Assembly: GCF_006345805.1 (NCBI RefSeq)
Contig: NC_043016.1
Span: 31,310,001 to 31,374,000 of the forward strand
Source of the DNA: Octopus sinensis
Taxonomy: Eukaryota
Length of the DNA: 64,000 nucleotides
Reading direction: 5' to 3'
The translations under genes were made by a program, and so were the position numbers. How positions within the stretch are numbered: position 1 is the first letter of the stretch; every line of letters starts with the position of its first letter. The notes under the pieces are model-generated. The model was not told where the DNA came from and did no database searches. It saw only the letters and a program-made list of their open reading frames with translations. Below, in pieces: positions 16,501-28,500 of the stretch.

Positions 16501-19500
16501 AATCTCTCAGAAACTATATCTAAAAATTCTGATAACTGAGAGTATTGCTAAAATACTGAGTTGTAATTTCAGAGAGGTTAAATGATTGGTTAAGAAAACT
16601 GAGTTTTTGATTTTGAAATAAGTTAATAAGACAATTATTCTGGCATACAAGTCCTTGTGTAATTAATGTTAATATATTTCTTGTAATTTCTATGGTGGCA
16701 TTTATGACACTTAACATATATCTAAATCTTATGTGTATGTGTAAATAACAAACATTTAAGGAATTTATGGTAACAGTAACCACAAAATTAAAATTATTAT
16801 TGACTGAAGTTATCTTAAAGGTATTTTAGAGAAATCTGGTGTAACTGAATTCAATGTACCTAAGCTAGTTTAGAGAGATAAATAAATAGCTATTTATAAA
16901 TTTTTGTCTTTAACCCCCAAGGTGCTGATTAAATTTTATGTATATTAACACACTGATAGAGAGCACAGAAACACAATCACTGTTCATACCAAGGAAACAG
17001 TCTTGTACCTTTCCCTCTGTAGTCTTGGATGATGCACACTTAAATCTATCAAAGTCAACAAATGATAGGTCTCATAATGTATCTTGGTGATCCCCTTCCA
17101 AAGACTAGTCTTTTTCTTCAGGTCCGGACAGTTTCTTAGATCTAATTAGCTGTTGATTGTCTACAGAGTTCAAGTAGTAACAATAATGGAGTACTACTCC
17201 CATACTCAGGCTTGTGTTGCTGCTTTACACACAAACTTTCCAGACTACATCCAAAAGAAGCCACTTGACTGATAGGCAAAGTCTCACTCATCAAAAAACT
17301 GTAACCTCTGGCTCACAGACATATGTTTCCTTGCTCTGCCATTCTATCACTACTGCTATGGCTTGTCCTCTGAATTAACATTTTGAATACCATCTCCACC
17401 CAGGTTGATAAAGCACATCTGTTTCTCCTCTCTGTATCATTCCTACTACTTATCAGGTTGTGCACAAATCACTAAGGCTAAACCTTCTTTCTCCAGAATG
17501 CCAACAATCAGAAATTTACTCTTCACTGGTATTTTTCATGTAGACGTTCACTTACAGATGTTAAATCTGAATGTCAACTGTATAGACTTCACCAGTTTCA
17601 GTGAACCTGTAAATTTCATAGGCATTGAATCTTCTTTTAGACTAAACTAATAAATGAAACGTGGGATTTTTACCTTTTGATTGACAGATTTAAAAAATAA
17701 TCTTTTGTAACTAAACACTTTCAGACTTCGTACTCTTGTAGAATGTGTCTCATAAAACATCTTATTACTCTTGGCGTTGTTAAAAAAATTCTGTATTTTG
17801 GAAGCTATATTTTGTTAAAGTTGTCGTATTTCAGTAATTTCAACCAATCAAGATGTGTATTCAGCTGAATAAAATTACTGTCATTGTTTGTCAACAACAA
17901 CTATCGGCAGTGTATTTTTTGTTTGTCACTGTTATTTATGACATCATTTGTGCTTTTGTACTGGCTATAGCTTTAAAGTTTTAGGGTTAGGGTTAAGGTT
18001 AGTGTTGGGGTTTTAGGGTTAGAGTTACGGAAAAAAATGAAAAATGAAGCACAAACGATTATGGTGGTGCCATGAAGTAAACATGCTTCAGACACACTTG
18101 TTTATTCATACAAACATAACTGAGATGAACAGTGACAAACGAAATATACACTGCCGATAGTTGTTGTTGACAAACAACAGCAGTAATTTTATTCAGCTGA
18201 ATACACGTCATTGATTGGTTGAAATTACCGAAACATGACAACTTTAACAAAAAATAACTTCCAAAATACAGAATTTTCTCAACAATGACAAGAGTAAAAG
18301 ATGTTTTATGTGACACATTCTACCAGTATACGAAGTTTGAAAGTGCTTAGTTACAAAAGATTATTTTTTAAATCTGTCGGTCAAAAGGTAAAGAGCCGAA
18401 ACGTGAGATCAGGTGCATGAAGTAAGTATTCTAGAAAGGTGTTGTATGTTGTGTGGATTTCCAGACTGTTGTTCATGGCACAAGAAATTTATGAATGCTT
18501 AGTTATGCAACTAAATTGACTAGGTAGGTTAGGGTATAACATAATCATGAACTGTAATTTTGCCTGTCTCAATGATTAGTTTTATATATTTTAATATCAG
18601 GTGATGGTGTTGAATTTGGCACTTCATCTTCAAGATAGTTTAAGACAATTCAACACAAAAAAGCCAAAATCTTTTCATGAAGAAATGTTGTGGAACCAAC
18701 AGATACAACAAAAATTCAAAGACTCTGAAGAACAAAAGAAATTGGCTAATAATCGGTTACAAGAAGAAAAATTTGTAAGCTTATGTATTTATGTATATTT
18801 TCTGTTTTACTTATATTAATGTCTAATGTGACTGTTCCAAAGAGTGACTAAATATAAATATTTATGAGTGTGTGTGTATGCGTGCATGTGAATGTATATG
18901 CATGTGTTTGTATCTGTGTCATTGTCTCTCTCACTCTCTTCATATATGTGTGTGTTGGCACTTGTGCAGGTGACATGTAAAAAAAAACACAATTTTTCCG
19001 TGGCCATTGCCAGTACCGCCTGACTGGCCCTCGTGCCGGTGGCACGTAAAAGCACCCACTACACTCTCGGAGTGGTTGGCATTAGGAAGGGCATCCAGCT
19101 GTAGAAACTCTGCCAGATCAAGATTGAAGCCTGGTGCAGCCATCTGGTTCGCCAGGCCTCAGTCAAATCATCCAAGCCATGCTAGCATGGAAAGTGGACG
19201 TTAAATGATGATGATGTGTGTGTGTGTGTGTGTGTGTGTACATATCAGTGTCTCTGCGTGTGTGTATGTGTATACATATCTATATCTAAATATATTTGTG
19301 TGTATATATACATATGTGTGGTGTGTGTGTGTATATATATATATATATATATATATATATATATACATATACCTATATGTGTGTATATGTATATATAAAT
19401 TTTGTTGTGTAATGTATGGATTCATAGAATTATGTGGCTATCACAGAAAGCTTCTCCAGCAGACTCTGCTAACAAAGCACATAGGAATCCAATACAGAGG

Positions 19501-25500: not shown

Positions 25501-28500
25501 CTAAACTGCCCACTGACAAATTAATCCCAATTCAAATTACAATAAATGTAAACATCTCAGCACTTCTAAAAGCAAACTTTATTTGTTTACATTTATTGTA
25601 ATTTGAATTTAACATACAGTGTCAGATTAATTTGTCAGTGGGCAGTTTAGCTTAATGGTAAAGCACTTGACCAGTAACAACTGTGAGTTTGAGTCTCATG
25701 GCTGGCTGCTGACAAACTTTTCCGCAAAATATGGATATTTTATCCTGTTCCTGCTGTACTATCAGTATTATTCTGTGTTTGAGAATAGATTATTTCCTTA
25801 TCTGTATCTTTCAATACATCTCAGCACTTCTAAAAGCAAACTTTGTTTACATTTATCATAATTTGAATTTAATATATATATAATTTATCGATCCTTAAAT
25901 GTTTCTTTTTTTTAAACCAATATTAAAACATGTAATACATGTAATTTATAAACATGTCATAGTTTATATTGTGCTTCTTTAGCTAATTAAAATATTTTAT
26001 TCTTCAGTTAAATAATAATTTTTTTTTTTTTTCATTTTGCAGTAAATATCATTTCCTTGAAGACTCAGGTAAGAATCTGTTTTTTTTTTTTTGCACCCCT
26101 CTAATTGACCCCAGTACTTGTTTTAAAACCCTGGTACTTATTCTATCAATCCCTGTTTTCCCTTTTTGCCAAATTGCTAAGTTACTGGAATGTAAGCAAA
26201 GCAACACCAGTTGTCAAGTGGTGGTATGGGTGCAAGCACAAAGATACTCCCCTACACACACACACACACACTCTCTCTCTCTCTCTCTCTCTCACACACA
26301 CACACACAATGGGCTTCTTTCAGTTTCTGCCTACCAGATTCACTCACAAGGCTTTGGTCAAGCTGAGGCTATAGTAGATGACACATGCCCAAGGTATCAC
26401 ACAGTGGGATTGAACCCTGAATCATTTAGTTGGGAAGCAAACATCTTACCACATAGTCCCATGGCTGCATTTACCTCAACCACAGCTGTGCTTTTACATA
26501 GCCATGGCTTTAGTATTATAAACCATCCTTTGAACAGTCATCACTTATTTGACAAATTACTTGATATTCAGAGTATCTTGCATTATTAAAGATAACTAGA
26601 TCTATGGATATCCCCCATTGTTTATAGTGTATGCTTTATCATTGGTCTCATTTTTTTTTAACATTCAGATAGCCAAGATGAAGAGAAGATAGAATTAAGA
26701 AAACAGTATCGATGGGCTTTAAACACACAGAGATTTCAAAATGAATTTGAAGTAATTGAATTCTTAGGACAAGGTGGTTTTGGAAATGTTATAAAAGTAA
26801 GAATATTATTTCGAATAATTTTTTAAAAGGCATCATTGTTTATATATATATATATATCCCATTTTTTTTACATTCATTAAAAAAAAAATTATTGATCATT
26901 CTGTGGTCTCTATTCATTGAACTTGGTGACTGTTTACCATCATGAAGAAAATCCACTTTTTCTTGCTACCTTCTCTCTTTTCTCAATGCTGCTATGCTGT
27001 GCCTAACTCATCGGTATACTATTTTAAACATTGCTTACTGCAAAACTTATATTAAAAATCATTTCATACCCATTTTTCCATTCTTCTATAAACTTCCAAT
27101 AAACCAAGTTGAAGACAAACTGTTGTAACCTCATTTTTATGACTGTTCCCTGTCAAGGAATATCTGAACGAGACTGTGGATACTGTGCTTCTTTAGACTA
27201 GTGAACTTTTCATAGAAAAAAAAAAGGCTCATACAGGCTTTGTTTGTTTTTTCATTGATAAATTCACATCAAAACAGGCCCTAGAGATTACAACTTTTTT
27301 CTCTTAAATTAAAACAACTACATACTCAAATTATTTGATAATCTCTTTTTTTTTTCATAGGTGAAGAACAAAATGGATACAAGACATTATGCTATAAAGA
27401 TTATACATTCAAATGTCAAGCATTTTAAAAACATCACAACAGAAGTAAAGCTATTATCACGACTGAATCATGAAAATATTGTTAGGTATTATATTTTCAT
27501 TTCATAAGAGTCTGACAATTCAAATGTTTCAATCTTGTTTATTTTCCTTTTCTAACATAATGTTTGCTTAAAACTACTCTAAAGATAATTGACACAAAGT
27601 TAATATTCCTATCTCTTTTATTGCAATTATTTCATTAGAGGACAACCAAACCTCTTAAATAGCCAGTTTTAAATTAACTTTCCCAAAGTATTTTGCCGAA
27701 ACACACACTCAGTCCTTCCTCCTCAAAAACTGTATTCTTCTGGAATATTTCCTAGCTAAATTACTCTCTGAAAATCATTAATTTATAGAAGATAAATATT
27801 ATTTACATTAACCTTACCTGGTGAAGGTGTATGGCTCAGTGGTTTGAGCATCGGGCTCACAATCATGAGGAATGAGTTCAATTCTTGGACCAGGCTGTGT
27901 GTTGTGTTCTTCAGCAAAACATTTTATTTCATGCTGGTCCAGTTCACTCATTTTACAGAAATGAGTTGTGATATCACTGGTGCCAAGTTGTATCAGCCTT
28001 TGCCTTTCCCTTGGATAACATCAGTGGCATGGAGAGAGGAACCTGGTATGGCTGGCCAACTGCTGGTTTTCTGTAAACAACTTTGCTTGGAGTTGTGCCT
28101 CAGAAGGGAACTTTCTAGGTGCAATCCCATGGTCATTCATGACGGAAGGGGGTCTTCTTCTAACCTTACCTGAAGATCTCTGGAGACAAGTGCTTGATAC
28201 TTTTTTCTTGGATGAAGTAAAAAATAAGACCAGTTTTTGTCTGCATTTTGTTTCTTTTGTCTTTTTTTTTTTGTTTTCTGTCATGTTATCTCTCTTTCTT
28301 TCATCCTTTCCTTTGTCTTGTTTTTTCTTTATATTCACTGATCTGAAGAAAGCATTTATAGACCCTCTTAGATTGGTACCATTAATGTTTCTCTCAAAAT
28401 CTTAACGGTAAAGAGAATAAGATCAGTGTCCCGGTTTTTCTGGCATATATATTCCTCTTTGGACAGGACACCAACCCATTGCAGGATTATTCATTTTTAC

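What the first reader, a model, noticed from the sequence alone, without database searches (positions are those of the whole stretch)
18601..26796. GCN2-like kinase apparently lacking the entire pseudokinase domain
Sequence: the charged region (exon 4) joins the kinase G-loop (exon 8) through only three short exons (66, 86 and 26 nt), so the kinase starts near residue 253. The 7.9 kb between exons 4 and 8 is largely recognisable SINE, MITE and RTE sequence with no kinase-like frame. Established: yeast and vertebrate GCN2 carry a roughly 250-aa pseudokinase (YKD) between RWD and kinase that is needed for activation, and their kinase starts near residue 590-600. Inference: this is either a divergent cephalopod GCN2 paralogue or a restructured orthologue with different activation logic.
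Basis: partly seen in the sequence, partly recalled or inferred. Interest (0 to 1): 0.82.

Follow-up and report, generated by a model that had tools for sequence, protein, structure and literature searches.

The report
Octopus GCN2 kinase without its pseudokinase
The octopus version of the stress kinase GCN2 really does lack the regulatory pseudokinase domain that yeast and human GCN2 need, and a cuttlefish lacks it too. The gene models are already public, and similar domain-less GCN2s turn up in some insects and in protozoa.

Summary
The window is Octopus sinensis chromosome CM016878.1 and carries the GCN2 (EIF2AK4) gene on the + strand.

- **Exons.** Exon 4 (18601-18774) reaches the G-loop exon (26669-26796) through three exons of 66, 86 and 26 nt: 20727-20792, 23982-24067 and 26043-26068. 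All have GT-AG sites. They match the annotated 1201-aa proteins of O. sinensis and O. vulgaris, and the O. bimaculoides model has the same junctions.
- **No hidden pseudokinase.** tblastn, Pfam and a purpose-built pseudokinase HMM find no pseudokinase coding sequence in the 7.9-kb interval or elsewhere in the window. The same HMM pipeline recovers seven colinear pseudokinase exons in a snail GCN2 locus.
- **No assembly deletion.** Three octopus assemblies are colinear across the interval.
- **Lineage.** The cuttlefish locus also lacks the domain. Bivalve and gastropod GCN2s have it.
- **Function.** The octopus kinase domain keeps all catalytic motifs and has dN/dS of about 0.07.

The best reading is a fast-evolving GCN2 orthologue that lost the pseudokinase before octopods and decapods split. 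A second, canonical GCN2 locus could not be excluded with these tools. Pseudokinase-less GCN2 is known in protozoa, and gene models suggest it in Hemiptera and a moth. I rate this a new variant of a known kind, of moderate interest.

The parts
4392..4508 (+). GCN2 exon 1 (start codon, N-terminal part of the RWD domain)
   Evidence: Exact match to P0121 residues 1-39; donor GTAAGG.
12558..12664 (+). GCN2 exon 2 (RWD)
   Evidence: Exact match to P0121 residues 40-75; AG/GT sites.
15984..16086 (+). GCN2 exon 3 (RWD)
   Evidence: Exact match to P0121; AG/GT sites.
18601..18774 (+). GCN2 exon 4: last RWD helix plus the start of the charged linker; ends in phase 0
   Evidence: tblastn E=5e-8 to residues 108-165 of a canonical GCN2.
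18775..20726 (+). Intron 4: SINE-like repeat and microsatellites, no coding signal
20727..20792 (+). GCN2 exon 5 (66 nt; [22 protein letters not shown], charged linker)
   Evidence: Exact match to P0121 residues 168-189. Sites ..tttttaag| and |gtaagt. Two synonymous differences from O. bimaculoides.
23982..24067 (+). GCN2 exon 6 (86 nt; [28 protein letters not shown], Ser/Thr- and charge-rich linker)
   Evidence: Four nucleotide and three amino-acid differences from O. bimaculoides; splice sites conserved.
26043..26068 (+). GCN2 exon 7 (26 nt; (N)KYHFLEDS)
   Evidence: Identical in O. bimaculoides.
26669..26796 (+). GCN2 exon 8: acidic pre-kinase segment and the G-loop ([12 protein letters not shown]) of the catalytic kinase domain
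   Evidence: Identical in O. bimaculoides.
27361..27485 (+). GCN2 exon 9: beta3 Lys (YAIKII), alphaC Glu and beta4
29090..31641 (+). Exons 10 (29090-29212) and 11 (31572-31641): the acidic beta4-beta5 kinase insert, shorter than in other animals
34245..46097 (+). Exons 12-17 (34245-34271, 37118-37240, 38236-38337, 41140-41277, 43298-43447, 45855-46097): kinase C-lobe with HRD, DFG, activation-loop Thr and alphaG
   Evidence: Pfam Pkinase 9.8e-51.
48010..60471 (+). Exons 18-21 (48010-48207, 57450-57598, 58719-58785, 60358-60471): start of the HisRS-like domain; the gene runs on past the end of the window
   Evidence: Pfam tRNA-synt_His 6.5e-10 over residues 648-946.

Best explanation
This is the Octopus sinensis GCN2/EIF2AK4 gene. 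It encodes a 1201-aa protein with the domain order RWD, charged linker of about 110 aa (end of exon 4, exons 5-7, start of exon 8), catalytic eIF2-alpha kinase domain with a short acidic insert, HisRS-like domain, and C-terminal region. The roughly 270-aa pseudokinase domain and its flanking linkers are absent from the gene, not just from the model. In other molluscs they sit between the charged region and the kinase.

The loss predates the octopod-decapod split, because a cuttlefish locus shows the same gap. It came with accelerated evolution of every remaining domain.

Inferred, not shown: the protein still works as a GCN1-, tRNA- and stalled-ribosome-responsive eIF2-alpha kinase. Its kinase domain would be activated directly by the HisRS-like and C-terminal domains and by RWD-GCN1, without the pseudokinase-kinase contact and pseudokinase dimer that yeast and human GCN2 need.
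For: **Gene structure**
- P0121 maps exactly to the window with GT-AG junctions throughout.
- O. sinensis, O. vulgaris and O. bimaculoides models all use the same exon 4-5-6-7-8 junctions.

**Assembly**
- The window is 100% identical to O. sinensis locus L005.
- It is colinear with the independent O. vulgaris assembly at 98.2-98.8% identity, with no Ns.
- It is colinear with O. bimaculoides at about 90% identity.

**No pseudokinase coding sequence**
- The pseudokinase HMM finds seven colinear exons in the Lymnaea locus L004, with E from 7e-11 to 8e-3.
- The same HMM hits only true kinase exons in the window, in L001 and in the Sepia locus L002.
- Pfam finds nothing in the interval.

**Protein architecture**
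- Pfam on the protein gives RWD 9.7e-21, one split Pkinase 9.8e-51 and tRNA-synt_His 6.5e-10.
- The bivalve protein P0126 shows a third kinase stretch, and the pseudokinase HMM scores it at E=1.4e-93.

**Other molluscs are canonical**
- Sinanodonta is 1674 aa and Dreissena 1668 aa; Lymnaea also has the domain.

**Function retained in Octopus**
- G-loop, VAIK Lys, alphaC Glu, HRD, DFG and the activation-loop Thr are all present.
- dN/dS between O. sinensis and O. bimaculoides is 0.17 overall and 0.07 in the kinase domain.
- Exons 5-7 differ at 6 of 178 nt, against about 10% divergence in the introns, and their splice sites are conserved.

**Accelerated evolution**
- Octopus versus bivalve identity is 50% in the kinase C-lobe and 33% in the HisRS-like domain.
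- Among bivalve, gastropod and nemertean the figures are 72-76% and about 50%.
Against: - I could not inspect any transcript reads. The protein collections searched hold no cephalopod transcript-derived ORF spanning the junctions, so exon usage rests on gene models and cross-species conservation.
- No tool here searches cephalopod genomes, so a second, canonical GCN2 locus, or a pseudokinase encoded by a separate gene, is not excluded.
- The NJ tree puts the cephalopod pair at the base of the animals, not among the lophotrochozoans. This is probably long-branch attraction, but it is also what a divergent paralogue would give.
- The Sepia pharaonis gene model is imperfect, and its locus lacks a detectable beta5-alphaE kinase exon. 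The cuttlefish copy may be broken or misassembled.
- The linker exons 5-7 have dN/dS of 0.47, based on only 6 changes.
- Kinase activity and its mode of activation are untested.
Confidence: 0.75

Rival explanations
1. This is a divergent paralogue. Cephalopods keep a canonical five-domain GCN2 elsewhere in the genome, and this locus is a duplicated, streamlined copy with a specialised role.
For: - The protein is unusually divergent in every domain.
- It falls outside the lophotrochozoan group in an NJ tree.
- Tandem GCN2-like duplicates do occur in another mollusc: the Lymnaea proteins P0136 and P0161 lie on one contig.
Against: - Octopus and cuttlefish each show this form, and no other cephalopod GCN2 cluster turned up. 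Of the best 150 representatives, only about two dozen could be named, and none of the rest could be assigned to a cephalopod.
- NCBI names this gene plain 'eIF-2-alpha kinase GCN2' in O. sinensis and O. bimaculoides.
- Its best identities, 38-40%, are to lophotrochozoan GCN2s.
- This was not directly testable. The pseudokinase query to the protein database returned only plant MAP3Ks.
Confidence: 0.12
2. This is an annotation or assembly artefact. The pseudokinase exons exist but are missing from the assembly, or are too diverged to detect and are skipped by the gene predictors.
For: - A 26-nt exon and a 7.9-kb repeat-rich interval are the sort of place where models go wrong.
- O. bimaculoides has N gaps in this interval.
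- No transcript reads could be examined.
Against: - Two gap-free assemblies from different projects are colinear over the whole interval.
- Three annotation efforts give the same junctions.
- The exon 4 and exon 8 phases need an insert of 3n+1 nt, and the three exons supply exactly that.
- The HMM pipeline detects pseudokinase exons in a snail but none here or in cuttlefish.
- The splice sites of exons 5-7 are conserved in O. bimaculoides.
Confidence: 0.05
3. The gene is decaying. GCN2 is under relaxed selection in coleoid cephalopods, the pseudokinase loss is one step of erosion, and the protein no longer acts as a regulated eIF2-alpha kinase.
For: - Divergence is accelerated in all domains; Octopus versus Sepia is only 41% identical.
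- The Sepia locus lacks a detectable beta5-alphaE kinase exon.
- The C-terminal 200 aa are only about 22% identical to other animals, and Pfam gives no HGTP_anticodon2 hit.
Against: - The 1201-codon ORF is intact in two species, and all 20 junctions resolved in the window are GT-AG.
- All catalytic motifs are kept.
- Kinase-domain dN/dS between Octopus species is 0.07.
Confidence: 0.05

Closest known systems
Canonical opisthokont GCN2 / EIF2AK4 (yeast Gcn2, human GCN2; bivalve Sinanodonta KAL3874664.1, 1674 aa)
   Same: - N-terminal RWD domain and a charged linker.
- An eIF2-alpha-kinase-type catalytic domain with an acidic beta4-beta5 insert and all catalytic motifs.
- A HisRS-like domain followed by a C-terminal region.
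- The same pre-kinase 'SR(L/F)..EFE.(L/I)..LG.G.FG' context.
   Different: - No pseudokinase domain; the RWD-to-kinase gap is 108 aa against 340-690 aa.
- The kinase insert is about 60 aa, against roughly 140-190 aa in the bivalve and nemertean aligned here.
- Total length is 1201 aa against about 1650 aa.
- Every shared domain is markedly more diverged than among other lophotrochozoans.
Protozoan GCN2-like kinases without a pseudokinase (Leishmania LdeK1, Toxoplasma TgIF2K-C/D, Plasmodium PfeIK1; PMC4889150)
   Same: LdeK1, the one described in detail, has RWD + kinase + weakly conserved HisRS-like domain with no pseudokinase, and is still treated as a GCN2-type starvation kinase; the paper reports the same lack of a pseudokinase for the other two.
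   Different: Those lineages may never have had the domain; PMC12867742 speaks of GCN2 orthologues from 'before GCN2 psiKD emerged in plants'. In cephalopods the absence is a secondary loss inside a phylum whose other classes keep the domain.
Pseudokinase-less GCN2 gene models in insects (Diaphorina citri KAI5707240.1, Apolygus lucorum KAF6217270.1, Cimex lectularius XP_024083003.1, Choristoneura fumiferana XP_073950849.1)
   Same: - RWD-to-kinase gap of 85-105 aa.
- One split Pkinase hit plus tRNA-synt_His.
- Length of 1120-1270 aa.
- No pseudokinase HMM hit.
   Different: - These are independent lineages.
- I checked only the protein models, not the loci.
- Their remaining domains are less diverged from canonical insect GCN2 than the cephalopod ones are from mollusc GCN2.

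Membership tests
GCN2 / EIF2AK4 orthologue group (eIF2-alpha kinase with RWD and HisRS-like domains) | N-terminal RWD (GCN1-binding) domain | tested here: met
   Pfam PF05773 at E=9.7e-21, residues 13-123, covering the full profile.
GCN2 / EIF2AK4 orthologue group (eIF2-alpha kinase with RWD and HisRS-like domains) | Catalytically competent eIF2-alpha-kinase-type domain with a beta4-beta5 insert | tested here: met
   - Pkinase 9.8e-51 in two stretches split by an acidic insert.
- G-loop, VAIK Lys, alphaC Glu, HRD, DFG and the activation-loop Thr are present.
- Every named match among the best hits is a GCN2.
GCN2 / EIF2AK4 orthologue group (eIF2-alpha kinase with RWD and HisRS-like domains) | HisRS-like domain C-terminal to the kinase | tested here: met
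   PF13393 tRNA-synt_His at E=6.5e-10, residues 648-946. Only its first part lies inside the window.
GCN2 / EIF2AK4 orthologue group (eIF2-alpha kinase with RWD and HisRS-like domains) | C-terminal dimerisation and ribosome-binding domain | tested here: inconclusive
   About 200 residues follow the HisRS-like core. They are only about 22% identical to other animals, and Pfam gives no hit there, HGTP_anticodon2 included. This part lies outside the window.
GCN2 / EIF2AK4 orthologue group (eIF2-alpha kinase with RWD and HisRS-like domains) | Phosphorylates eIF2-alpha Ser51 in response to uncharged tRNA or stalled ribosomes, through GCN1 | not testable with these tools
   This needs biochemistry or genetics.
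GCN2 / EIF2AK4 orthologue group (eIF2-alpha kinase with RWD and HisRS-like domains) | Single-copy orthologue (no second GCN2 in the genome) | not testable with these tools
   No cephalopod genome can be searched here. The indirect protein searches were uninformative.
Canonical five-domain GCN2 architecture (fungi, plants, most animals) | Pseudokinase domain between the charged linker and the kinase domain | tested here: not met
   - No pseudokinase in the protein.
- None in the 7.9-kb interval or anywhere in the window.
- The method is validated on the Lymnaea locus.
- Also absent from the O. bimaculoides and Sepia loci.

The most novel reading that the evidence does not exclude
Coleoid cephalopods carry, as their only GCN2, a fast-evolving form that discarded the pseudokinase more than 250 million years ago (the date is from my own knowledge). 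Its catalytic domain nevertheless stays under strong purifying selection. Together with independent losses in Hemiptera and Lepidoptera, this would be a natural experiment. It would show that the pseudokinase-kinase contact and pseudokinase dimer, essential in yeast and human, can be dispensed with in animals. The compensating changes would be readable from the cephalopod kinase and HisRS-like domains.
Probability: 0.55. Interest if true: 0.6.

Novelty: new variant of a known kind. Interest (0 to 1): 0.45.

Why it matters
GCN2 is the one eIF2-alpha kinase conserved across eukaryotes. Its pseudokinase is reported as essential for activation in yeast (PMC4014428), and in human cells mutating the pseudokinase dimer interface abolishes activity (PMC12867742).

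An animal lineage that removed the whole domain but kept the kinase under strong constraint gives a comparative handle on what the pseudokinase does and how its job can be bypassed. It also shows that "GCN2" annotations in invertebrates hide real differences in architecture.

The practical weight is moderate:
- the proteins are already in public databases;
- pseudokinase-less GCN2-like kinases are known from protozoa;
- nothing here shows how the octopus enzyme is regulated.

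Tried and rejected
1. **First protein search with a rough exon concatenate.** It returned only proteins under 960 aa and no cephalopod, so it could not show the real junctions. The exhaustive representative search did.
2. **Bivalve pseudokinase as a query, to look for a cephalopod paralogue.** Only three plant MAP3K-like hits came back. The word index does not reach this domain, so the search says nothing about paralogues.
3. **N-terminal Octopus/Sepia profile, to find squid or nautilus transcripts.** It found only an old 181-aa O. 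bimaculoides RWD fragment. The loss therefore cannot be dated beyond 'before the octopus-cuttlefish split'.
4. **Tracing four lophotrochozoan-like representatives to their source assemblies.** One is a metagenomic contig, one is a second Lymnaea gene, and two are not on record. None could be tied to a cephalopod.
5. **Phylogenetic footprinting between O. sinensis and O. bimaculoides to reveal hidden exons.** I dropped this because the introns are about 90% identical, which is too close to discriminate. I used the distant Sepia locus and the HMM instead.
6. **Pfam on DNA references containing stops.** I repeated the search with stops replaced by X.
No reverse-transcriptase domain was found in the interval, so the label stays unverified.
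8. **Literature searches for a described metazoan GCN2 without a pseudokinase, or for octopus GCN2.** They found only the protozoan cases.
9. **Structure prediction.** Not run. It would not bear on whether the domain is present.

Full report
**What the window is.** The 64-kb window is AT-rich eukaryotic DNA with no Ns. On the + strand it carries a multi-exon GCN2 (EIF2AK4) gene.
- An exhaustive profile-free search of 1.84 billion representative proteins gave one near-identical hit, P0121, of 1201 aa.
- P0121 is CAI9734436.1, 'eIF-2-alpha kinase GCN2-like', from Octopus vulgaris. Its 90% cluster also holds O. sinensis XP_036367432.1 (1201 aa, isoform X1), O. sinensis XP_036367433.1 (1091 aa, isoform X2), and O. 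bimaculoides XP_052829452.1 (686 aa, truncated).
- P0121 maps at 100% identity to the window for residues 1-812, after which the window ends.
- Window bases 18001-27500 are 100% identical to the O. sinensis record CM016878.1, so that is the source.

**Checking the observation.**
- Exon 4 (18601-18774) encodes the last RWD helix and the start of the charged region, and ends in phase 0.
- The G-loop exon (26669-26796) starts with two bases of a codon. A direct splice would frameshift into a stop.
- The three exons in between total 178 nt, which is 3n+1: 20727-20792 (66 nt), 23982-24067 (86 nt) and 26043-26068 (26 nt).
- Each has a polypyrimidine tract with AG and a GT donor.
- All 20 junctions that could be resolved in the window are GT-AG.
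- The kinase domain begins at about residue 248-253. In 90 of the roughly 100 representative GCN2s that have both domains, the gap from RWD to kinase is 265-690 aa (340 aa or more in all but two) and the kinase starts around residue 500-620.

**Is a pseudokinase hiding in the interval?** I looked in four ways.
1. tblastn with 120 GCN2 relatives, many carrying RWD + pseudokinase + kinase, gave no HSP between 18771 and 26596. In those relatives the 300-odd residues between the charged region and the kinase mapped nowhere in the window.
2. I built an HMM from the 400 residues upstream of the kinase in 29 relatives and searched every stop-free segment of at least 12 aa in all six frames. It cross-hit the true kinase exons, with E from 1.6e-6 to 2e-3. 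In the interval its only + strand match, at E=49, is exon 6 itself.
3. Pfam found no family in the three + strand frames of the interval.
4. As a positive control I ran the same HMM pipeline on a Lymnaea stagnalis GCN2-like locus, L004, which was not in the training set. It recovered seven colinear pseudokinase exons, with E from 7e-11 to 8e-3, followed by the kinase exons.

The method can therefore see a molluscan pseudokinase split into short exons, and it sees none here.

**Is it an assembly deletion?** No.
- The independent O. vulgaris assembly (GCA_951406725.2) is colinear with the window over the whole interval at 98.2-98.8% identity, with no Ns.
- O. bimaculoides (GCA_001194135.2) is colinear at about 90% identity, though it has N gaps.

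**Are exons 5-7 real?** The cross-species evidence says yes.
- Their splice sites are conserved in O. bimaculoides.
- They differ at 6 of 178 nt, against about 10% divergence in the flanking introns.
- The frame is kept. Exon 5 has only synonymous changes and exon 7 has none.
- Three annotation efforts use the same junctions: the O. vulgaris project, NCBI's models for O. sinensis and O. bimaculoides, and an older 473-aa O. bimaculoides model.
- I could not inspect reads, and the protein collections hold no cephalopod transcript ORF across these junctions.

**How old is the loss?**
- The cuttlefish protein CAE1280004.1 (Acanthosepion pharaonis) also runs from RWD to kinase with no second kinase domain.
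- In its locus, L002, the exon 4 equivalent including the charged region is at 27279-27443, and the G-loop exon is at about 36389-36463.
- The 9 kb between them has no Ns and gives no pseudokinase HMM or tblastn signal.
- Non-cephalopod molluscs are canonical: Sinanodonta woodiana 1674 aa, Dreissena polymorpha 1668 aa, and Lymnaea. In Sinanodonta the pseudokinase HMM scores E=1.4e-93 and Pfam finds a third kinase stretch.
- The simplest history is a single loss in the coleoid stem. Squid and Nautilus could not be examined.

**Is the gene functional?**
- Pfam finds RWD at 9.7e-21, one Pkinase at 9.8e-51 split by the acidic insert, and tRNA-synt_His at 6.5e-10.
- The kinase keeps the G-loop, the beta3 Lys (YAIKII), the alphaC Glu, HRD, DFG and the activation-loop Thr. 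Its beta4-beta5 insert is short, about 60 aa.
- Between O. sinensis and O. bimaculoides, dN/dS is 0.17 over 629 codons. It is 0.07 in the kinase, 0.30 in the RWD region, and 0.47 in the linker exons, the last based on only six changes.
- So the gene is under purifying selection within Octopus.
- Over the longer term the cephalopod protein evolved fast. Octopus versus bivalve identity is 50% in the kinase C-lobe and 33% in the HisRS-like domain. Among bivalve, gastropod and nemertean the figures are 72-76% and about 50%. Octopus versus Sepia is only 41% overall.
- An NJ tree puts the cephalopod pair at the base of the animals. I read this as long-branch attraction, but I cannot prove it.

**Mechanism.**
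- *Shown:* the domain order is RWD, charged and Ser/Thr-rich linker of about 110 aa, kinase, HisRS-like domain and C-terminal region; the kinase is constrained and looks catalytically competent.
- *Inferred from established work on yeast and human GCN2:* it senses uncharged tRNA and stalled ribosomes through RWD-GCN1 and the HisRS-like and C-terminal domains, and phosphorylates eIF2-alpha. The pseudokinase stimulates the yeast kinase (PMC4014428), and its dimer interface is needed in human cells (PMC12867742). The octopus kinase must therefore reach its active state without that partner. The faster evolution of the kinase and HisRS-like domains fits compensatory rewiring but does not demonstrate it.

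**Comparison with what is known.**
- GCN2-like kinases without a pseudokinase are documented in Leishmania, Toxoplasma and Plasmodium (PMC4889150).
- Among the roughly 100 representative GCN2s with both RWD and kinase, ten have a gap shorter than 130 aa. Besides Octopus and Sepia, the named ones are Diaphorina citri (three assemblies), Apolygus lucorum, Cimex lectularius (isoform X2) and Choristoneura fumiferana. All have one kinase domain by Pfam and by the HMM.
- I checked only the protein models for these insects, not their loci.
- Four literature searches found no description of a metazoan GCN2 lacking the domain, nor of octopus GCN2.

**Verdict.**
- The finding is a secondary domain loss in a well-known kinase. 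The proteins are already public although the loss seems not to have been remarked on, so I rate it a new variant of a known kind with moderate interest (0.45).

Noticed in passing
L002 (Sepia pharaonis CAHIKZ030002036.1) 42140-51014: The cuttlefish GCN2 locus has no detectable exon for kinase beta5-alphaE (the 'LYIQMEYCEK...WRLFREI...YIH' stretch) on either strand of the 95-kb locus. There are no Ns, and the flanking kinase exons are present. The gene model skips it. This could be a broken gene or a misassembly.
   Followed up: partly
L004 and the contig CAXITT010000085.1 (Lymnaea stagnalis): Two different GCN2-like proteins, P0136 (1307 aa) and P0161 (1115 aa), about 51% identical and both with a pseudokinase, appear to lie on the same 1.69-Mb Lymnaea contig. 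This suggests a gastropod GCN2 duplication.
   Followed up: no
Proteins P0149, P0155, P0166, P0164 (Diaphorina, Apolygus, Cimex, Choristoneura): GCN2 gene models in three hemipterans and a moth also go from RWD to kinase in 85-105 aa with no pseudokinase. The Papilio xuthus fragment P0066 keeps only a short 'YLGHCLGEH' stretch resembling the conserved 'G.CLGHS' motif at the start of the pseudokinase. This points to recurrent loss in insects.
   Followed up: partly
window 14521-15036 (intron 2): A 109-nt unit is repeated 4.7 times at 97% identity. Its translation carries the '[12 protein letters not shown]' motif of a SINE-like element scattered through the window, and a copy of that element at 18956-19405 has up to 76 in-window matches.
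   Followed up: partly
window 52122-53052 (+), in the long intron between exons 18 and 19: A GC-richer patch (46% against about 35%) has long ORFs, one with a PHD/C1-type zinc finger (Pfam 1e-5), and a '[13 protein letters not shown]' tail. It is probably the 3' part of a LINE-like retroelement. Similar degraded tails lie at 22750-23590 and around 62557-62733.
   Followed up: partly
window 21430-23059: This 1.6-kb segment of intron 5 has no counterpart in the otherwise colinear O. bimaculoides locus. It is either a lineage-specific insertion or a deletion in O. bimaculoides.
   Followed up: no
L001 (O. bimaculoides CM046616.1) 53750-69175: The O. bimaculoides RefSeq model XP_052829452.1 stops at 686 aa with an unrelated 54-aa tail. 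The locus has 11 kb of Ns, including a 3.9-kb gap at 61400-65255, so the truncation looks like an assembly-gap artefact.
   Followed up: partly
P0121 residues 704-751 (window 57450-57598): The stretch that reads 'KRYCIDR(V/I)(F/Y)RE' in the canonical GCN2s inspected (P0132, P0149) reads '[11 protein letters not shown]' in octopus and 'KRYNIDRIFIG' in cuttlefish. The Arg-x-Glu pair is lost in both. From memory, this may correspond to motif 2 of the HisRS-like domain; that was not checked, and neither was any bearing on tRNA binding.
   Followed up: no
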